A stretch of 64,000 bases of DNA. Source: Lepidodermella squamata (Eukaryota; Animalia; Gastrotricha). Each line of letters opens with the position of its first letter. The first letter of the stretch is position 1. The notes under the pieces are model-generated. The model searched no databases. It was given only the letters and a program-made list of their open reading frames with translations, and had not been told where the DNA came from. The stretch is taken from positions 2,294,001 to 2,358,000 of the forward strand of contig JBLDXI010000020.1 of assembly GCA_047495785.1 (NCBI GenBank), written 5' to 3'. Shown piece by piece: positions 38,187 through 52,400 of the stretch. Position numbers and translations under genes: made by a program.

Positions 38187-38482
38187 ACATCATCTCATTC
38201 AGCTTTTTTCTTATTAACCGTTTTATCGAGCAATAAAAAAGCATGACGTTGAGTTAACTAAAATATATTTTTATTCCACGTCTGCCAAAGTTCAGTATAA
38301 AAATTTCAATATGAGCATTAGAGAGATGAAAGAGCAGAACCACAACAATCGATCTCAAGAATTGCATCCCTAAAAATAACACTGCGCTTTCCTATACGCT
38401 TAAAAAGAAGACAAACATGTCCCTATGATCCTTATCCTATCTACTCAAAAACGCAGTGGTTGTCCTATCCTATCGTTCGCAA

Positions 38483-41178
38483 TTAAAGTTCGTCCAGAAA
38501 TTCCTTTAGAGGCGGGATTTCGGGCCGAAGTCCCTTTCGTTTCCGGGTTTCGGTGACGATTTGCCCTGCTTTCGAGGTCGTATCCATCGGGTCTTCGTCA
38601 ATCACCTGCCAGTGGTCGAAGGCGAGTTGAGGCGACGCCTGGCCGCCCGAGCTCAGTCTCAAGGCCGTCGTGAAGCCAAAAGACTCATTAACAGGTAGAT
38701 AGGCCTTGATGATGAACAAGGGCGTTCCGGCAACCTGAGTTTGCTCAAAAATCTTTCCGCGTCGCTGGTTCAAAACTTTGTAGACGCTTCCGATCGTTGA
38801 ATCAGTGCACTGAATTTCGACCATGTAGATAGGCTCCAGAAGTCTCGGGTTCGCTGTCAGCATTGCGGCTGAGAAGGCCCGCCGCGCGGCTGGGATGATT
38901 TGGCTACCGCCTCGGTGGGCTGGATCAGCATGCAGCTTGGCATCGGTCAAGTCAAAACGAACACCCCGCATAGCCTCGTTTGCCAGGACACCTTCTTTCG
39001 ACGCCCAAGCGAAACCTCCGACTACACTGTCTTTCACTTCCTTCAAATACTGGACACCTTTCGTCACATCGAAAACTATGTTAGGTCCAGTTATGTCGGG
39101 TCCGAAACACCAAAGTCGCCTCGCTTCCGTGATATCGTAGTCGAACCGTTCGTTCAAAAACTTTGCTCGCAATTTGAAGTCCTGATTCGGGTTGACGTCG
39201 CCCTTTTCGATAGCCTCGGCTAAACCTTCGGGCATTGGTAGGGCTTTCACGTACAAACGGTTATGGTTGTTGCCCGATTTCGCGAGGCAGATTCGGCTCG
39301 ATTCACTTGTTACAGTTTCGCGATATGAAACAACAGGCTCCGATATTTTCAAAGGAACTTTGGCGTGATCCTCTTCCAGGTCTTTCAAGCAGATTTCAAG
39401 GTGGAGTTCACCAGCTCCAGCGATGACATGTTGGCCTGTTTCCTCCGTCAAACATTGCACAACAGGGTCGGACTTGGCAAGGCGCTTTAGACCTTCAATG
39501 AGTTTCGGAAGATCGGCCGGGTTTTTGCATTCGACAGCAACGCGTACGACAGGGCTGACACTGAACGCCATCTGCCGCATGTTATGCGCGTCTTTGTACG
39601 TCGAGATTGTCCCGGTCTTTACTAGGTACTTGTCGACCCCGATCAGAGCGCAGATGTTACCGCAGGGGACATCGTCCATCGACTCGACATGACGCCCGAC
39701 CATCAAGCATACACCCTGAATTCTTCGCTCGTACAAGTCATCCTTGTAGCCGGGTTTGTAGTTCGGCCCCATGATTCGCACCTCAGAAGGCCTGACAGTT
39801 CCGGAGAAAACACGGCCGAAAGCGTAGAATCGGCCACCATCGGCTGATGACGGTACCATTTTGGAAACATACATCATCAAAGGCGCCTCGGGGTCGCAAT
39901 TCCGAATACCCATTGCAGCTTCATCGTCATTGGGCCCCTCGTACAAAATTTCCATTCGGTAACGTTGGGCAGTTACCGGAGAAGGTAAATGAACCGTGAT
40001 CAAATTCAGCAACGCTTCGCCAGCTGGAATCCAGTGCCGCATTATCTCTTTCAGCAGCTCCTTAGTCGTCTGTTCGTCCTCACTTTTCCGAAGTTTCACG
40101 CCCAGTTTTTCCGCGAGTTTCAATACTTCCTCTTTCGACTTTTTCATGCAAGTTTCAAACACCTGGTAGATGGGCTCTAGAACGAACATGCAGAAGCCAC
40201 GTTTGCAGTCTTCACCCCGTTCGGTTGTCCATTTCTTCGTCTTTGTGTTGTAGAAATTGTCGCCCCAGAAACGGCGCATCAGAACTTCCGGCGAAATGTT
40301 GAACTTGCTTGCGTACATCTCCGCGAAATCCCTCAGCGTAAAGCCCCAGCTTTGCAGTGCAGAACCAAAGCCGACGTTACCCTTCACTGGGTCTATTTGC
40401 AAGTCACCCATAGGGCCATCTTCCTCGCCGTAGGTTGAAATAACAACGTTGACATTCTCGATAATTCGAACCAAATTTCGGTACAGAGCTTCGGGTTCCA
40501 GTTGCAAAGTCAATACCGCCAAATCCATTTTGTTCATAAACAGCACGGGCTTGACACGCTCTCGAATAGCTTGGCGCAAAACAGTTTCCGTTTGTACGCA
40601 GACACCTTAACGCCAGAAGATTAATATCGATATTAACATTTTAAGGAAGTTTAATACCTGCTACGCAGTCGACTACAACCAAGGCACCATCAGTGCACCG
40701 CAACGCCGCTGTGACTTCGGAACTGAAGTCGATATGGCCAGGCGAGTCGATCAAGTTAACTAAAAACTCGTTTGAATCGCTGGCTCGTTCTTGCTTTATG
40801 CAGGACAATTGCTCCTCGCTGAGACGGTAGAAGAGCGAGACTCCGGTCGACTTGATCGTTATGCATCGATCTTGTTCGTCGTCGCGGGTATCGGTGACGC
40901 GCATATTGCCAGCGCTACCCTCGGCTATCAAACCTGATTGATAACGTAAAGAAGTAAAGAAATTAAAGAATTAAAGATATAAAGAAAGACCTGCTCTTGC
41001 TAACAGAGAGTCAGTCAGGGTTGATTTTCCGTGGTCAACATGGGCGATCACAGAGATGTTCCGGATGTTCTCCGGTCGGCTCATAGCCCGGCGTTTTTCG
41101 CTTACGGACAGTTTCATCTGGTTCAAATAAATGAGGTAATCACAAAGTAAAAGATAAACAATAAAGCAGTATTACCAT
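38483..41178 (-). CDS. EEF2: Eukaryotic elongation factor 2, divergent copy (exons 41178-41176, 41117-40991, 40933-40658, 40605-38483)
   Basis: [71 protein letters not shown], diphthamide loop HADPAHRGG. An intron directly follows the first ATG. The frame is open throughout. Confidence 0.95.
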
Positions 41179-41272
41179 ATTAGATTCTTGTTGAAGTCTA
41201 AGAAATTTTAGAATAAAAAGCGCTTATCAGCGCACCTGTGTTTAAGTTTCTGAGCTTGCAGGCATAAATTGC

Positions 41273-41308
41273 CAATGAAAATTTCCGCTCTTCTGTGCTG
41301 CTTATATA
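41273..41308 (-). promoter_or_regulatory. TATA box plus initiator upstream of the eEF2 copy
   Basis: TATATAAG at 41308-41301 and an Inr-like TCATTG at 41278-41273, about 32 nt from the TATA start to the Inr A. Confidence 0.55.
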
Positions 41309-42845
41309 GCCTCTGCTAGTGGGTGTGGGTTTGACACGCATTTCGCACGTGGACACAAAGCCAGCGTTTTTTCATCGCGCTGTGCCGGCGCATTTATCAT
41401 GTACTCTATTTTATCCGTTATACATTTAGCCGAAATTGCATCATCTATGATTCATCGGCGCCGCGATATAAATGCAGCACGTTGACGCTTAAGGAACCGC
41501 CGCAAAAGTTGGCATCTCGCATGAATAATTATTGTTCTGAGAAGCGAATGCTCCGAGGCATAAAAAACGATGATAACGTGTTCGTATTAAAATTTATGGC
41601 GTTCGTTCTCAGGTGCTTCAAAGATACATCAGTTATGACTCATAGAAGATGAATGGTGAATCACGCTTTGAGCTTGAGACGATTCCTTTCTGAAGTCTCC
41701 CGTTCTTCCGGTTTTGCTTTTTTCATAGTTGAATACTCTGAGCTGAAATTAAAATATTTCGCCAAGCGCGCAAAAGTGCTCATACCGCCAAAAATGACTT
41801 GTTGACGGATTCGTAATCTACTCATCGCGATTTGCAATAATTTGAAAACCCGGTTTCAGCATTCATCAGGGATCAAAAGAGCTATGTCCACTGGGATCGT
41901 CGTTTAACGAGGTCAATTTTCGCGGCCCAAGTCCACAGCATGCGGAGTTATGTCCACACACAAAAATAGATGTGTCGTAAAAATTATTGGTATTTTTTGC
42001 AATTACTCATATCAGTATTCACAGGTGAATGATTCATAGCTAATACACACCGATAAGCGCGAATTTGCCCCATTCATAAACCGCCTTGGCACTTCACAAA
42101 TTAGCTCAAAATTTGCAAACGGTTTCATCAGGCTCCAAAACGATAAAAAATAAAAATTGAAAATCCGAGCATTGAATTTTTCGGAGCCGCAACGAATCGA
42201 ACCCGAGGCGTCCACAAACCGCATGCGAAAAACCAATAATTCCATGTCCGTTTTTACCTGTAGCGCTAAAAGTAAAAATTCTAGGTAAGTTCGGCAGTTT
42301 GCGATTGAGGAGCTCAAACTTTGCAAATGGATTCTTTCTTTTTATATTTTCATTTTACGCACAAGAGGTTCCAATTTCGATATTACGTACTAGAGGCCAG
42401 AGTTTAATGAGCCATTCAAAATTATCCATGCATGGATTTGTAGCTGTCCACATGCAACTTCTACTTGAAAAAAAAATAAAAAATCCTATGGAAAATCAGC
42501 CGAAAAGAAAAAATTAAGGAAAAAGGGACAGACACCTGAATGGCAGACTCGATGAGGAAACCTAGGCAGTTACCTATATTCAAGGGAAGGTTCCTACCGC
42601 CACTCATCGTTCGAGATATGGATTTTGTAAGCGGACCTTGCTTGTTGAAGGAGCACATAGCAACTTGCAACGGTTTTACGATACTCCCTTCAACTCGATT
42701 ACTCATTCGAATGGCGTTTATGCATTGCATGGATGTATGGATGTTTTGAATGATGACCTGGCCTGAACTGACTTCGATTCTCTGCACGAAACATTTTAGA
42801 AATGCACCTTTTCCACGTCGAGCTCTCAACTATGGGATTATGCTC

Positions 42846-46428: not shown

Positions 46429-49400
46429 ATGGGTGACGAGGATGACTGGGCTAAACTTCCCAGCGATCAGAAAGTTGCACATAAGGTAATCTTTGCATTA
46501 TTACACAATGAAGTATTTGATCATTGGAATATTGTAATCAGAACTGGAAAGCTCGCGTAGCTGGTTACACTGAACTGCAGAAACTTTTCAATGGTCTTGA
46601 CGAGAAGAGTCCTGAATTTCAAAAGTACGGACCTCAGCTCAAAGGCTTTATTGCCGATTCCAATGCTGCTGCCCAAGAAAAAGGCGTCGATGCCGCCGTT
46701 GCTTTTCTCAACAATGCAGCTCAGACAATCGTGGCAAAATGCGCACAAGAAGTTGCTGGAGCCGCGATTACCAAAGGCCTGGCTGCGACTAAACCCAAAA
46801 CTAAAGAGCAGTCACAAGAGATTGTCATGTTATTGATTGAACGAGAAAAGCACGAATTGGTTATGGTTAGTTTCTGGTTATGAGTTTTTGTACATTTAAT
46901 CGATATTTGTCATTTTCATAGGAGGAATTAATGACGGCACTCGAGAACAAACAGCCGAAATTCGTCGCCACTTGCGCTACAGTCCTCAGGGACGCGCTGA
47001 AAAGCTTCGGCCCGAAAATTATCAACATTAAAACCGTGCTGAAAACAGCGCCTCGCCTACTTGAAGACCGCGATCCCACTGTTCGAGATGCTGGAAAACA
47101 GCTGATTCTTGAGATGGTAATGTGGGTAGGCCGGGCAGCGATAAAACCGAATTTAGCCGCCTTAAAACCTGTCCAGCTGCAAGAATTAGACGCGGAATTC
47201 GACAAAATTGAGGCGAATCGTGTGCAGCCAGTCCCGACGCGCTTCACGTTGACAGAACAAAAGAAACGAATGGCGGCTGGTTACGTAGGCGACGCACCTG
47301 CCGCTGCTGGACCAGCCGGCCCCGCGGCGGCGGGCGCGGCGGTCGCGGTCGAAACAAAGCAAATCGACGCGTGGGATTTGGCTGATCCCGAGGAGATCAT
47401 CTCGAAATTTCCGTCAGATTGGCACGAAAAATTAGAGTCGAAAAAGTGGCAAGAGCGTAAAGAAGCGCTTGAACCCTTCGAAAAATTGACTAGCGCTGTT
47501 CGGTTAAAACCGGGTGAATACGGCGATTTACTCCATGCGCTGATTAATGTAGTTAAAAAAGACGCAAATATCGTTGTTGTCCAGCTAGCTGCTAAAATTG
47601 TAACTGGTTTAGCCCTTGGTCTTCGGAAACATTTCTCGCCCTATGCCCACGCGTCGCTAGAAGCGCTACTTGAGCGTTCCAAGGAGAAGAAACAGTCGTT
47701 AACCCAGGCTTTTCGCGAGGGATGTGATGCAATTTTTGTCGCTTGCAATCTCGAGTCGATGGCTGAACACGTTTTGCCGTTTTTGTCCAACAAAACCCCG
47801 GCTGTTCGCATGGAAACAGCCGCGTTCCTCGACCGTTGTTTCACGGCATCGCGGGGTCCGAAATTGTTTGGCAATAAGAAAATCGTTAAATTATACGTTG
47901 CGCCTCTGCTAACCCTGGTCGGTGATCCGATGGGCGAAGTTCGTGAGGCAGCTTTTGAGACCCTGGGTTGTCTCCACGCATTTGCGGGCGAAAAAGCGGT
48001 TGAGCCGCTGCTGGCTGATGTTGATCAGATTCGTTTGACGAAAATTCACGAGGTATCACAGAAAAAACTTGCGGCAGCCACTGCGAATGGGCCGGCCCCT
48101 GCTGCAGCTGCTGCTGCCCCGCCACCTCCTGAACCGGCTAAACCCGCCGCTGCTGCTCCAGCGAAAAAACCAGTTGCCCGACCGGCCACTGCTTCATCAT
48201 CGAACGGAGGTTCAACCTACGGCGATGCAGTTGATGCTGGACCAGTCCCTGCCGTTAAAAAACCCGCGGCGAAATCGGCCCCGGCCGGTGGTCGAAAACC
48301 AGGTAGTAACAAGCCGAAAGTTTTCGAAGAGTCTGAAATTTCGGAAGATGCCGCGATTTTCGAGTGTTCCAACATTTTCGGTGGCGAGGAAATTGTCAAA
48401 CAATTACAGTCGTCGAACTGGAAGGAGCGGCAAGAAGCGGTTGATAAAATGATTAATACTTTGAAGCCGATGTCTGCGGAAAGTATTCCCGTTCAAGCGG
48501 TTATTCGACTGTTGGCTGCTAAAGCTGGGCTTCGAGACAACAATTTGCCAGTTATGAAGCTGAAACTTGATTTGGTCGCTATATTGGCCTCGGAAAAGGT
48601 ATTTATACATTTTATTGTTAAAATGAATTGAAAAATTCAAATTATTTCCACTGCTAAAAGTGAAGGTTTATCACTAAATTTGAGCCTTATAAATCTCAGG
48701 AATTGCATGTTTTGGGTTTTTTGTATTTTCCCGATTTGTTAATTCAAATTTGCCGCATCTTCGTATCGGATCCAGGTCTAATGCGGCGTGTCCCAGAAGT
48801 CGCGCAACTATTTTTTTAATGTGGCAACATTTTGTAGGAAATTGAACCAATTTTTGTAAATTAAACCTACCGAGAGAATATTTCATCCGCGATTTAACCG
48901 AAGAATTAGAAATTTACCGGAGTAAACCCGGAAAATCCCGATGGTAACTGGATCGGTAATTATCGGTATTTTACCCAGTTGGACCAAATTTTTCCGGGAT
49001 TTTTTAATTTTATTGACAAGTGACATGCTTTATTACTAGTCTCGTGATATTTTGAATTTTTCTAAAAATTTTCTGGCCCTGAGATGTGACTTCACCTCTC
49101 ATTTTAACGTTTCTGAACGGTTTTCCGTGTATTTTCTTTGCTTGTGTTGCGTTGATATTTATTTTCGAATAACTATTAGGATGAAAGCTGATAATTCGTG
49201 CCTTACTCTTAACTTCGGGTTATAGGTTGTGCGAATCTTGGTCTACCCCAAATTTAATCATCCTATTATTTTTATCAAATATTGAGAATGACCTTTCAGC
49301 GCTATTAAATTCATTTTCTTTCCAGGTCGGAAGTCGTTTCTCGAAAACGTCTGCTTTCGCGTGCCTAAACGATATTATCGACAAAATCGGCGACGCTAAG

Positions 49401-52400
49401 AACGGTCCAACCGTCCAAAAACTCCTATCAGACATGGCCGACTACTGCGACCCGATCGGACCAGAATTCCTAGTACCCTACGTCCTATCTCAGGCGATGA
49501 GCAGCAAAAGCCCGAAAACTCACCAGGAAGCCCTGAATTGGGCCGCTAGCGTTATGAACGACTTCGGCCTTCGTTTCACCCCGAAAGAAATCGTCCCGCT
49601 GATGAGGCAGGGCCTGCAATCAGCGAACGGAGCAGTCCGAACGTCGGCTATTGCCGCTTTTGGGAAATTGTTCCAGTTGACTGGACCCACCTTAAGAATG
49701 CTACTCGAGGACGAAAAACCGGCCTTGTTGCAACTCATCGACGCAGAATTTGAGCGGGTTAAAGATCAACCCGCCCCGAAGGCGACGAGAGGAATTCGAA
49801 AATCAGCCATTCCTGAGGGCGATGAAGTTGACGCGGCCGAGGCTGAGCAAAACGCAGCTCAAGCCGCTGCAGACGCTGAGGCGGCCCTCGAAGCGCTGCT
49901 ACCTCGAGTCGATATCAGTCAAAAATTCCAGGGCGAATTGATGGATCAGCTGGACGATAAGACTTCTTACAAAGTTCGAAAGGAAGCGATCGATAAGGTC
50001 CTTGAAATTATTAAGGAGGCTAAACTCATCCACCCACCCCTTGGAGATCTGCCGACAATTTTGGTGAAACGGTTGAAAGAGGCGAATAAAGTGCTGGTTC
50101 AAAGCGCGTTGACGGTTTGCGAACAGCTAGCAACGTCGATGGGCAAGAAAATTGCAGAACATATCTCAATTCTTGGCCCGGCGATTCTGATCAGTTTCGG
50201 CGATAACAAACCGCAAATTCGGCAACAGGCAACTGGCTGTATGACGGTTTGGCTGGAGCAGTGCAACAAAAATTTTGCGCCTTTTTTCGAAAATTTGCTG
50301 TTCAGCGCAGCGCTTCAGGCGGGTAATTCTACCCTGAGGGCTGAGTTGTTGACATGGCTGGGCAAGAATCTACCGCCAGCTATGTGCAGATTGCCGAAAG
50401 ATGATATGATTGCGTCGATTCCGTTCGTTTTATCGGCTATGGAAGATCGAAGTGCTGAGGTTCGGAAAGCTGGTCAAGAGGCTTTGTTGCCTATGATGAT
50501 CCACACAGGTATAAATAGAAACATAATTGTAAATTGAATAGATTCCGATCCTGCTTTTAAAATCAATTAATGAAGAGTTTATATGGCTAAAAAAAGATAA
50601 AATTGAATTCTTATTTTAACAAATGTACGTTGCCGATGGGAATAAAATCTTACGGAGAAATTCGGTCCAACCGGCTAAAATACGAAAAATTGTCGAAACA
50701 GTTACCATTGGGGTTGCTCTGTTAAATTTCGAATTTCTCAGGGGGAAATTACAGATGAAGGATGGGTGGTGTTCGACATATTTATTCTGTCACGAACATG
50801 ATCGGTGACGATGCCGATGATTTAGACGGGCGGATGTAACCTTTCAAGTAATTGCGAACACTTCCAGCTCTGTTTCGGAGTAGCTGTAGGGCCGAACGGA
50901 GGAACGGATGGGAGGCCAATAGTCTTACAGCACAGATCTTCTATAAACAGCCGGCACATAATTAATTGGCAAGCTGCGTTTATAAACTGCGAAAACATTG
51001 CGCCCTGAAACAGTCACCGTTACCTTACTAGGCGACTTAGCAGACAAATATATGGAGTAGAGATAGCGAAGAACCACGTCTTGTCGTCGCTGAACTGAAT
51101 CTGGCAGGAAGAACGTGTGAACGTCTGCGACGAGATCTTGTTAGCACCTATAACAGAGACCGACATGGTAAAATCTGCCAATTGGACATCCATGCTGAAA
51201 GCCAAGTGGAGCCTAAGTATGACAGTGAGTCAAGGGACATCAAGAGAAGAGAAACCGGGAGTAGTCTCAATAGAGAAAAAAGCGCCTCTAGCCTTAACAT
51301 GAACCGAATATTCATAGTCGAATACTTCGTCATTCCAAACAGCAACGTAAACTTAGGGTGTAGAAGCAGAATCAGACCAACCAGCAATTGCAGCAGTGTA
51401 GCAGGCTGCCAAATCAGAGGACGGGAATTTACATAGTGTCAGCGGCTGCGTTTGTCACATTCAGCCACGGAATGGCCGATTCATTCAGTTCCGAAAACCG
51501 AGGCAACGACCCCGGCGCTCGCTCGCACGACCTTGACCAAGTCGCCACGAAGGGCGGCAGCGCGAGCCTTGCGGACAAAGCACCACCTTGCCAGCCGGAT
51601 GACCTGGCCGGCAAAGGTGATGATCGCGAAACAAAGCGAGGCGTACACCGCCGCTTTCTGAGTGTCCACACCAATTCCCGATCGCGGGGGTTGTTCGAGT
51701 GAGGGGCGCGTTCCTTCATTCTTTTGCGTTAAAAAGCACAGTCTAGAAAACAAAACGTATTTGTTTATTGATGTGGAGTAGCAAGCCACGTGGCACGGCG
51801 TCACAACTATGAGGTTATAAACCGGCAAAGTGCCAACGCAAGGGGCGCAGCCGGCGACTACGAGGTCACCAGCAGGCGGGAAAGATCCGTGTGGTAACAA
51901 GTAATAACAAAAAATTGCATCAGTGATGTCAAAAGTCGGAGCCAGAGTCATGCCCAGAGTGACCCTGTCAAGAAAAGTACGCCGGATGTGGGCGCTACTT
52001 CCCATAAACAAATTTGTTGAACGCAGTGTACCACTCTAGCCAGGCGTCCGGGCTGTCCCCAAGCCCGCCAGGCCGGACGTGGTGATATCAAAGCTGCCGA
52101 CCGGCGTCGATGGCAACGCCGGCACGGCGCTCGAAGAAGGCCCAGCACTGTTCCACGGACAGGGGGCCAGGCGGGCGAGGCGTGCGCTTCGCGAAGCAGG
52201 GCAACCTAAAAGTTTGTCGTAGGGACGACGACGACACGTAGTCGAGCGTTCGGCCATGATTCCAAGGCGTGCTTCAACAAGTTTGAGAAACTAGGCAGTC
52301 CCGGAAAAGAAAAAGTAATTAACAGTAGACCATCGGGTAGTGAGCGGTCCGCAAAGCGGCGCTCAGTTGGTCCGTAGGAGCAGAGGTCTCGAGGAAGTAG

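What the first reader, a model, noticed from the sequence alone, without database searches (positions are those of the whole stretch)
38483..41308. Intact eEF2 with changes clustered at its regulatory and toxin-target sites: a candidate specialised translocase
Seen in the sequence: the ORF is complete, but usually near-invariant motifs differ. The diphthamide loop reads [19 protein letters not shown] (canonical DVTLHADAIHRGGGQIIPT), so the His is kept while A713P, I714A and G719S (human numbering) surround it. KSPNKHNR reads KSGNNHNR, losing the proline after S595. The T56 context AGETRFTDTR reads [10 protein letters not shown], and LRSNTGGQAFPQC reads [13 protein letters not shown]. Established (from memory): DPxHRG occurs in archaeal EF2, residues around H715 affect diphthamide formation and ADP-ribosylation by diphtheria-type toxins, S595-P596 is a proline-directed site promoting eEF2K phosphorylation of T56, and P596 affects translational fidelity. 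Inference: this is a second, condition-specific eEF2 that may escape eEF2K shut-off or toxin ADP-ribosylation, or change frameshift fidelity.
Basis: partly seen in the sequence, partly recalled or inferred. Interest (0 to 1): 0.8.

Follow-up and report, generated by a model that had tools for sequence, protein, structure and literature searches.

The report
Fast-evolved second eEF2 translocase gene
This small invertebrate has a normal gene for the ribosome-moving factor eEF2 and also a second, expressed and selectively maintained copy in which the tip that reads the codon-anticodon pair has been rebuilt at the positions where laboratory mutations cause frameshifting, block the diphthamide modification or give toxin resistance.

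Summary
The gene lies on the minus strand, has 4 exons and encodes 842 aa. A spliced RNA contig confirms all three introns, so the gene is transcribed.

It is not the only eEF2. A canonical copy with the standard motifs lies 1.7 Mb away on the same contig, 72% identical in protein. Snu114 and EFL1 orthologues are separate genes.

- **Divergence:** at 416 columns at least 98% conserved in 112 eEF2s, the window copy differs at 58 and the canonical copy at 3.
- **Where the changes fall:** radical changes concentrate in domain IV, especially its tip loops (P580G, K582N, N657K, V691A, T692K, A697P, I698A). The GTPase motifs and the RNA-contact residues H583, H694, D696 and H699 are kept.
- **Selection:** allelic or strain differences are 22 synonymous to 2 non-synonymous, so purifying selection acts now.
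- **Relatives:** it groups with its own lineage's canonical eEF2 on a branch about 7 times longer. I found no orthologue in public protein or metagenome data.

G719S and the E-to-N change are lineage-wide drift, and F-to-V next to T56 lies within normal variation. I detected no eEF2K orthologue, so escape from eEF2K is unsupported. Altered diphthamide, toxin or frame-keeping behaviour is plausible but untested.

The parts
41301..41310 (-). TATA-like box (TATATAAG) upstream of the transcript
   Evidence: Read directly. RNA contig coverage begins downstream of it (depth table).
41176..41241 (-). Exon 1: 5' UTR (minimum extent) ending in the ATG at 41178-41176
   Evidence: RNA contig record 6 of X1 extends 66 nt beyond the joint 41117/41176. 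The canonical copy has the same ATG-only first exon.
41118..41175 (-). Intron 1, 58 nt, GT..AG, phase 0 directly after the ATG
   Evidence: Skipped in the X1 RNA contig and retained in the X2 DNA contig. Splice sites checked.
40991..41117 (-). Exon 2: codons 2-44 (part), P-loop AHVDHGKST
   Evidence: Pfam GTP_EFTU hit; translation.
40934..40990 (-). Intron 2, 57 nt, specific to this copy
   Evidence: Skipped in the X1 RNA contig. The canonical copy has no intron here.
40658..40933 (-). Exon 3: switch I ([10 protein letters not shown] at 40878-40916) and G3 motif DSPGH
   Evidence: Pfam GTP_EFTU hit; motifs.
40606..40657 (-). Intron 3, 52 nt, same position and phase as an intron of the canonical copy
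   Evidence: Skipped in the X1 RNA contig; compared with the canonical copy.
38483..40605 (-). Exon 4: rest of the G domain and domains II-V, with the stop codon at 38485-38483
   Evidence: Pfam D2, EFG_III, EFG_IV and EFG_C. Best PDB matches are eEF2 at 1070 bits.
39254..39286 (-). Domain IV tip loop, codons 576-586 (KSGNNHNR): P580G, K582N, H583 kept
   Evidence: The role of K582/P580/H583 is from PMC6143161 and PMC8674143.
38894..38947 (-). Diphthamide loop, codons 689-706: V691A, T692K, A697P, I698A; H694, D696, H699 and R700 kept
38612..38665 (-). Domain V segment, codons 783-800 ([13 protein letters not shown]): F793S, C796L, V797A
38253..38482 (-). 3' UTR with AATAAA at 38275-38270
   Evidence: Sequence. 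X1 contigs break at 38253.

Best explanation
This is a functional, lineage-restricted second eEF2 that arose by an old DNA-level duplication of the canonical gene, evolved about 7 times faster, and is now held by purifying selection. It keeps everything needed to bind the ribosome as a GTPase: the G1, G3 and G4 motifs and all five domains. It also keeps the four tip residues that grip the codon-anticodon duplex (H583, H694, D696 and the diphthamide-acceptor H699). The residues that shape and support those loops have been replaced. The tRNA-contacting K582 and the P580 that positions it are gone. A697P and I698A sit directly before the acceptor histidine, and the third tip loop carries N657K. 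My inference is that it still acts as a translocase but as a specialised, probably minor, isoform. Its remodelled tip would change reading-frame maintenance and probably make it a poor substrate for diphthamide synthesis, and hence for diphtheria-type ADP-ribosylating toxins. Shown here: existence, expression, splicing, selection, paralogy, and the location of the changes. Inferred: retained translocase activity, the altered tip behaviour, and minor-isoform status.
For: - **Second copy:** a canonical copy exists at G000:C20:~607.6-610.4 kb with the standard motifs.
- **Family:** the domain set is that of eEF2. PDB best hits are eEF2 at 1070 bits, against Snu114 at 493 bits. Separate Snu114 and EFL1 orthologues exist.
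- **Expression:** a spliced RNA contig skips all three introns.
- **Divergence:** 58 versus 3 departures at 416 columns at least 98% conserved, and 30 versus 1 at 243 invariant columns. The conservation gradient is nevertheless kept, with 12% changed at invariant columns against 73% at variable ones.
- **Location of changes:** radical changes concentrate in the domain IV tip loops, p = 2e-4. GTPase motifs and contact residues are intact.
- **Selection:** polymorphism is 22 synonymous to 2 non-synonymous, p = 1.6e-12.
- **Phylogeny:** it forms a clade with its own lineage's eEF2 (100/99 support), with a branch of 0.85 against about 0.11.
- **Origin:** two of its three introns share position and phase with the canonical gene, which argues for DNA-level duplication.
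- **Literature:** I698A and P580H cause -1 frameshifts in yeast (PMC6193676). K582 contacts tRNA and is positioned by P580-H583 stacking (PMC6143161, Drosophila numbering K584/P582/H585). Ile714Asn blocks diphthamide synthesis while function is kept, and gives dominant toxin resistance in heterozygous CHO cells (PMC2816718).
Against: - No biochemical or stage-specific expression data exist.
- Only one sequence of this paralogue is known, so positive selection cannot be separated from a past phase of relaxed constraint. An MK-type contrast loses significance once synonymous saturation is allowed for.
- Loss of K582 could mean that translocation is impaired rather than tuned.
- The substitutions here (I to A, P to G) are not the same residues as most of the characterised mutations, except yeast I698A.
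- Minor-isoform status rests only on lower GC3 (0.58 versus 0.69) and on a depth spike that may be cross-laid canonical mRNA.
Confidence: 0.6

Rival explanations
1. Toxin-insensitive back-up translocase. The copy exists specifically because it cannot be diphthamide-modified or ADP-ribosylated, so a bacterivorous animal keeps translating when bacterial eEF2-targeting toxins inactivate the main factor. This is a more specific version of the best explanation.
For: The changes sit immediately beside the acceptor histidine (A697P, I698A). In CHO cells one mutant allele at Ile714, Gly717 or Gly719 beside a wild-type allele gives dominant resistance with translation kept (PMC2816718). This is the same two-gene arrangement as here. 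The diphthamide pathway (DPH1, DPH2) is present, so the canonical factor should be a toxin target.
Against: The acceptor His and HRGG are kept under selection, which is unexpected if avoiding modification were the point. Many changes lie far from the toxin site (58 conserved columns across all domains). I have no evidence on the animal's diet or toxin exposure. The toxin contact residues were not checked against a structure here.
Confidence: 0.2
2. It is no longer a translocase. It would be a ribosome-binding GTPase with another job, such as parking on dormant ribosomes, rescue or quality control, in the way EFL1 or the archaeal aEF-2p paralogues left translocation.
For: The tRNA-contacting K582 and its positioning proline are lost, and all three tip loops are altered (PMC6143161). 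The branch is very long. Archaeal EF-2 paralogues with degenerate tip loops offer a precedent (PMC6143161).
Against: Unlike aEF-2p it keeps H583, H694, D696, H699, R700 and E658. At 72% identity it is far closer to eEF2 than EFL1 (32%) or Snu114 (40%) are. Domain III and the G domain are almost unchanged at conserved columns.
Confidence: 0.13
3. It is a redundant duplicate drifting under relaxed constraint with no distinct function, and the clustered changes are simply tolerated.
For: Conserved-site changes are elevated throughout. Codon bias is weaker than in the canonical copy. No orthologue was found elsewhere.
Against: The synonymous to non-synonymous ratio of 22:2 shows constraint as strong as on the canonical gene, whose omega is 0.03. 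The duplication is old, with synonymous sites saturated, yet the frame, the splice sites and expression are intact.
Confidence: 0.05
4. It is an eEF2 that escapes shut-off by eEF2 kinase.
For: The proline after S579 (human S595-P596) is lost, and the residue before the phospho-threonine is V instead of F.
Against: Both threonines are kept. Other eEF2s carry F, A or I at that position. The whole-genome Pfam Alpha_kinase search finds only two genes of about 300 aa that begin directly with the kinase domain. They match human eEF2K only at E = 4e-7 over 50 residues. There appears to be no eEF2K to escape from.
Confidence: 0.02

Closest known systems
Canonical eukaryotic elongation factor 2 (this genome's copy at G000:C20:~607.6-610.4 kb; yeast EFT1/2, human EEF2)
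   Same: Same five-domain architecture and the same length (842 aa). Same GTPase motifs, the diphthamide-acceptor His699, the HxDxxHRG frame and H583. Two intron positions are shared.
   Different: 72% identity only. It has 58 departures at near-invariant columns against 3 in the canonical copy. It lacks P580, K582, A697, I698, F793 and C796. Its tree branch is about 7 times longer, and it has three introns instead of five.
Yeast eEF2 domain IV tip mutants (I698A, P580H, H694N) and the human SCA26 P596H variant
   Same: The same positions are altered (I698 to A is identical; P580 is altered). In yeast those mutants are viable but raise -1 frameshifting (PMC6193676).
   Different: Those are single laboratory or disease mutations in the only eEF2. 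Here the changes are combined, naturally fixed, under selection, and sit in a second gene beside an intact one.
CHO eEF-2 alleles Ile714Asn, Gly717Arg, Gly719Arg and Ser584Gly (diphthamide-deficient, dominantly toxin-resistant)
   Same: Substitution at Ile714 (here Ala) and at Gly719 (here Ser, shared with the canonical copy). A resistant-type gene coexists with a normal one (PMC2816718).
   Different: The replacing residues differ. Lack of diphthamide and toxin resistance are not shown here.
Archaeal EF-2 paralogues aEF-2p (Asgard, Korarchaeota; PMC6143161)
   Same: A second EF-2 family gene with altered domain IV tip loops and GTPase motifs kept.
   Different: aEF-2p lacks the acceptor His and both loop motifs, and occurs in genomes without dph genes. 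This copy keeps the His and the contact residues, and the genome has DPH1 and DPH2.
Drosophila nasuta 'eEF2-like' protein (P0001)
   Same: An independent divergent animal eEF2 paralogue changed at several of the same near-invariant positions (M22I, P580R, I698V, G703S, T708A, C796S). Overlap is 8 positions against 3.9 expected, p = 0.03.
   Different: It is an insect gene with a separate origin and fewer changes (28 against 58). Its function is likewise unknown.

Membership tests
eEF2 (eukaryotic translocase) | Domain set GTP_EFTU, D2, EFG_III, EFG_IV, EFG_C | tested here: met
   Pfam hits on all exons.
eEF2 (eukaryotic translocase) | Closer to eEF2 than to the sister families Snu114/EFTUD2 and EFL1 | tested here: met
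   PDB search gives eEF2 at 1070 bits against Snu114 at 493 bits. Separate Snu114 and EFL1 orthologues lie in the genome. It forms a clade with its own lineage's eEF2 at 100/99 support.
eEF2 (eukaryotic translocase) | Intact GTPase motifs G1, G3 and G4 | tested here: met
   [14 protein letters not shown] and NKMD are identical to the canonical copy. G5 carries G218A.
eEF2 (eukaryotic translocase) | Diphthamide-acceptor His in the HxDxxHRG loop | tested here: met
   H694, D696, H699, R700 and G701 are present.
eEF2 (eukaryotic translocase) | Near-invariant tip loop SPNKHN (P580, K582) and DAIH | tested here: not met
   It reads SGNNHN and DPAH here. KSPNKHNR occurs in 218 of 220 homologues and DAIHRG in 219 of 219.
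eEF2 (eukaryotic translocase) | Catalyses ribosomal translocation | not testable with these tools
   Needs complementation or in vitro translation.
eEF2K-regulated eEF2 | Phospho-acceptor threonines (human T56/T58) | tested here: met
   RVTDTR keeps both threonines.
eEF2K-regulated eEF2 | eEF2 kinase encoded in the genome | tested here: not met
   Only two small alpha-kinase genes were found. They show weak similarity to eEF2K (E = 4e-7) and have no N-terminal or SEL1-type extension in the open frames read. The six-frame search gives a lower bound only.
Diphthamide-deficient / toxin-resistant eEF2 variants | Substitution at a position known to block diphthamide synthesis (Ile714, Gly717, Gly719, Ser584) | tested here: met
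   I714(698)A is specific to this copy. G719(703)S is shared with the canonical copy. S584(568)T is also present (PMC2816718).
Diphthamide-deficient / toxin-resistant eEF2 variants | Lacks diphthamide and is not ADP-ribosylated | not testable with these tools
   Needs mass spectrometry and an ADP-ribosylation assay.
aEF-2p-type non-translocase EF-2 paralogue | Loss of the acceptor His and of both tip-loop motifs | tested here: not met
   The His and the contact residues are kept.
Processed retrogene or pseudogene | Intronless, or a disrupted frame, or neutral evolution | tested here: not met
   It has three spliced introns, two shared with the parent gene. The frame is open, and polymorphism is 22 synonymous to 2 non-synonymous.

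The most novel reading that the evidence does not exclude
An animal carries a naturally evolved alternative translocase whose codon-reading tip works without normal diphthamide chemistry. It would be either a built-in toxin-immune eEF2 or one half of an alternative factor set (this genome also has a divergent eRF1 beside a canonical one) that translates some messages with different frame-keeping or recoding rules.
Probability: 0.15. Interest if true: 0.85.

Novelty: new variant of a known kind. Interest (0 to 1): 0.55.

Why it matters
eEF2 is among the most conserved proteins in eukaryotes, and its domain IV tip is almost invariant. What we know about that tip comes from laboratory mutants in yeast and CHO cells and from a human ataxia allele. 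This gene is a natural experiment. It carries a combination of changes at those same positions, including the tRNA-contacting lysine and the two residues before the diphthamide histidine. The gene is expressed and held by selection next to an intact canonical gene. If it translocates, it shows which tip features are dispensable, and it offers a test of what diphthamide and the SPNKHN loop contribute to frame maintenance. If it resists ADP-ribosylation, it would be a natural counterpart of the dominant toxin-resistant alleles selected in cell culture. I found no paper describing a specialised eEF2 paralogue in animals.

Tried and rejected
- **Orthologue searches:** the word-index protein search with the large exon and the same search restricted to the divergent domain IV/V part gave nothing above 70% and 68% identity. 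The best hits are canonical eEF2s of relatives. The JGI metagenome scan gave nothing above 66%, and the copy-specific peptide patterns found no close relative. Public data for this animal group appear sparse, so this absence is weak evidence.
- **Recent duplication:** the AU test of a tree that places this copy next to its own canonical gene gave p = 0.036, a marginal rejection. The branch is long, so the timing relative to the two metatranscriptome relatives is not firm.
- **MK-type test:** it is significant with raw counts but not after allowing for synonymous saturation, so I do not use it.
- **Gene conversion between the copies:** rejected. The maximum local nucleotide identity is 79% over 35 codons.
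- **Retroposition:** rejected, because introns are shared.
- **Toxin contact residues:** the one open paper I queried (PMC10015456) did not list them, so toxin contacts were not checked.
- **Relative expression:** the reads tool was used once and cannot rank genes, so the relative expression of the two copies is only hinted at.
- **Joined model:** all database searches used single exons by reference. I built the joined coding sequence only inside local scripts (alignment, tree, dN/dS), and it was never printed or sent to a search or fold tool.
Full report
**Gene structure and expression**

The finding lies on the minus strand. A 698-codon open frame (38483-40579) is preceded by two shorter coding pieces. 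Joining them at GT..AG sites gives four exons:
- exon 1 ends in the ATG at 41178-41176 and contributes nothing else to the coding sequence
- exon 2 is 41117-40991
- exon 3 is 40933-40658
- exon 4 is 40605-38483

The introns are 58, 57 and 52 nt, and the product is 842 aa. In public run X1 a 1382-nt contig skips exactly these three introns with CT..AC ends on the plus strand. Run X2 keeps the introns and is DNA. The gene is therefore transcribed and spliced as modelled. A TATA-like box lies at 41310-41301 and an AATAAA at 38275-38270.

**Family**

Pfam finds GTP_EFTU, D2, EFG_III, EFG_IV and EFG_C. The best solved-structure matches are eEF2 at about 1070 bits, well above Snu114 at 493 bits.

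**Is it the only eEF2?**

No. The whole-genome search covered 121 Mb in 151 contigs. The window is C20:2294001-2358000. The search finds a second eEF2 on the same contig at about 607.6-610.4 kb. I modelled that copy as six exons and 842 aa. It carries the standard [37 protein letters not shown] and LRSGTGGQAFPQC, and it is 93% identical to a metatranscriptome protein, P0003. The locus on C32 is the Snu114/EFTUD2 orthologue and the locus on C9 is the EFL1 orthologue. The genome therefore has one canonical eEF2 and this divergent one.

The two copies compare as follows:

| Measure | Value |
|---|---|
| Protein identity | 71.6% |
| DNA identity | 68% |
| Third-codon-position identity | 41% |
| Highest local DNA identity (35 codons) | 79% |

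The duplication is old and I see no sign of gene conversion. Both genes have the ATG-only first exon and the intron inside the VDCV.G|VCVQ codon in the same phase. The window copy has one private intron and lacks three of the canonical copy's introns. This points to a DNA-level duplication, not a retrogene.

**How unusual is the sequence?**

I aligned both copies with 112 full-length eEF2s from the protein search and counted departures from the consensus:

| Column class | Columns | Window copy differs | Canonical copy differs |
|---|---|---|---|
| At least 98% conserved | 416 | 58 | 3 |
| Fully invariant | 243 | 30 | 1 |

Among 220 homologues, DAIHRG is present in every sequence that has the motif, and KSPNKHNR is present in 218.

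The F before the phospho-threonine is naturally variable.

Twenty-six of the 58 changes are radical (BLOSUM62 score of 0 or below), and 12 of these lie in domain IV. The share of conserved columns hit by a radical change is 16% in domain IV, 13% in domain V, 2% in the G domain and 0% in domain III. The two a priori tip loops carry 7 radical changes in 23 conserved columns, p = 2e-4.

In the copy's own numbering, which coincides with yeast numbering at these sites:
- Changed: P580G, K582N, N657K, V691A, T692K, A697P, I698A, T708A, Y714S, F793S, C796L, V797A.
- Kept: the G1, G3 and G4 motifs, H583, E658, H694, D696, H699 and R700.

**Selection**

The two runs and their allelic bubbles differ from the window at 24 coding positions. 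Of these, 22 are synonymous and 2 are not, whereas 23% synonymous would be expected by chance (p = 1.6e-12). Present-day constraint is therefore about as strong as on the canonical gene, whose omega against P0003 is 0.03 at dS 1.35.

Against the canonical copy, dN is 0.20 with synonymous sites saturated. The copy also keeps the normal gradient, with 12% of invariant columns changed against 73% of variable ones. It has been constrained throughout, more loosely or differently in the past and tightly now. An MK-type contrast is not robust to saturation.

**Phylogeny and distribution**

In a careful maximum-likelihood tree the copy forms a clade with the canonical copy, P0003 and P0004 (support 100/99) and is sister to those three (98/95). 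Its branch is 0.85 against about 0.11 for the canonical lineage. Forcing it next to its own canonical gene costs 7.8 log-likelihood units (AU p = 0.036).

The duplication therefore happened within this animal's lineage, probably before it split from the two relatives known only from metatranscriptomes. No orthologue turned up in the 5.8-billion-protein index, whether I searched with the large exon or restricted the search to the divergent part, or in JGI metagenome contigs.

Earlier notes of this scan guess a gastrotrich or a rotifer, and I did not test that.

**What the changed positions do elsewhere**

- Structures show that diphthamide 699, H583, H694 and D696 hold the codon-anticodon duplex during translocation (PMC8674143, PMC4896748). 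All four positions are kept here.
- The lysine of the SPNKHN loop contacts the tRNA and is positioned by Pro-His stacking (PMC6143161, Drosophila numbering K584/P582/H585). Both the lysine and the proline are lost here.
- I698A, P580H and H694N raise -1 frameshifting in yeast (PMC6193676).
- In CHO cells, Ile714Asn, Gly717Arg, Gly719Arg and Ser584Gly block diphthamide synthesis while translation continues. One such allele beside a wild-type allele gives dominant resistance to ADP-ribosylating toxins (PMC2816718). Ile714 is position 698 here.
- DPH1 and DPH2 are present in the genome.

**eEF2 kinase**

The Pfam Alpha_kinase search of the genome finds two genes only. Each is about 300 aa, starts directly with the kinase domain, and matches human eEF2K only weakly (E = 4e-7 over 50 residues), no better than it matches TRPM7. 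I conclude that an eEF2K orthologue is probably absent, so the idea of escape from eEF2K has no basis here.

**Interpretation**

The evidence best fits a functional second eEF2 that still binds the ribosome as a GTPase and probably still translocates, with a rebuilt anticodon-mimicry tip. The likely consequences are altered frame maintenance and reduced or absent diphthamide modification, and hence toxin insensitivity. These are inferred from mutants at the same positions and are not shown here.

It may be a minor isoform. Its GC3 is 0.58 against 0.69 for the canonical copy. A roughly 100-fold depth spike in one bin coincides with a 32-nt stretch where the two copies are 91% alike, so canonical mRNA may have been laid there. 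This is only a hint.

Rival readings, in order of weight, are:
1. a dedicated toxin-immune back-up;
2. a non-translocase ribosome GTPase;
3. a drifting redundant copy, which the polymorphism data argue against;
4. escape from eEF2K, which is unsupported.

**Context**

The neighbouring genes are ordinary: a CHTF18-like AAA protein and a ch-TOG/XMAP215 protein. An independent divergent eEF2-like protein of Drosophila nasuta is changed at several of the same near-invariant positions, with 8 positions shared against 3.9 expected, p = 0.03. The genome also holds a divergent eRF1 beside a canonical one (following earlier notes of this scan), so more than one translation factor has a divergent twin here.

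**Method note**

Database searches used single exons by reference. I built the joined coding sequences of both copies only inside local scripts, for alignment, trees and substitution counts. They were not printed or sent to any search or fold tool.

Noticed in passing
G000:C20:~607600-610400 (L011:2107-4980, minus strand): The canonical eEF2 of this genome and its two closest database relatives (P0003, P0004) carry HRGGSQ (Gly719/703 to Ser) and AGNAR (Glu to Asn). Both are rare among 220 eEF2s. Gly719 is a position where Arg blocks diphthamide synthesis in CHO cells.
   Followed up: partly
protein P0001 (Drosophila nasuta eEF2-like isoform X2): An independent divergent animal eEF2 paralogue is changed at M22I, P580R, I698V, G703S, T708A and C796S, overlapping this copy's changed positions more than expected (p = 0.03). 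The annotated product is 1178 aa and also carries a PAP/25A-associated domain, possibly a fused gene model.
   Followed up: partly
G000:C20:2246649-2247680 (about 46 kb before the window) and G000:C24:1703750-1704603: These are two paralogous small alpha-kinase genes of about 300 aa that start MGGTYSHETLYS, a possible N-myristoylation signal. They are the only Alpha_kinase hits in the genome and are not eEF2K-like.
   Followed up: partly
G000:C21:2418406-2418804, G000:C21:391022-391465 and G000:C17:2918279-2918665: There are three eRF1_2-domain loci. One is strong (170 bits, probably canonical eRF1). One is weaker with internal stops (124 bits, the divergent eRF1 noted earlier in this scan). 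One scores 90 bits (perhaps Pelota). A normal eRF1 therefore probably exists beside the divergent one.
   Followed up: partly
G000:C1:721821-722144, G000:C7:123849-124172 and G000:C17:385491-385814: Three strong eEF1A-type domain 3 loci were found. Two score identically and the third differs slightly, so eEF1A may also have a variant copy.
   Followed up: no
window:39446-39506 and 39611-39692: Both runs hold two haplotypes at about half depth each. They differ at 4-6% of bases, all at third codon positions, so heterozygosity at silent sites is high.
   Followed up: yes
window:39328-39471: Run X1 shows a summed contig depth of 7379 in this one bin against about 70 on either side. A 32-nt stretch at 39363-39394 is 91% identical to the canonical eEF2, so this may be canonical mRNA laid in part. 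The contig itself was not listed.
   Followed up: partly
window:40944-40989: Intron 2 is a T-rich stretch of short repeats. In X2, and in one X1 contig, it shows single-base deletions and alternative inserted letters, so its length is polymorphic.
   Followed up: no
window:30236-31888 and 46931-50537: The flanking genes are a CHTF18/RFC1-like AAA ATPase and a multi-TOG XMAP215/ch-TOG protein. Both are ordinary cell-division genes, and nothing links them to translation.
   Followed up: partly
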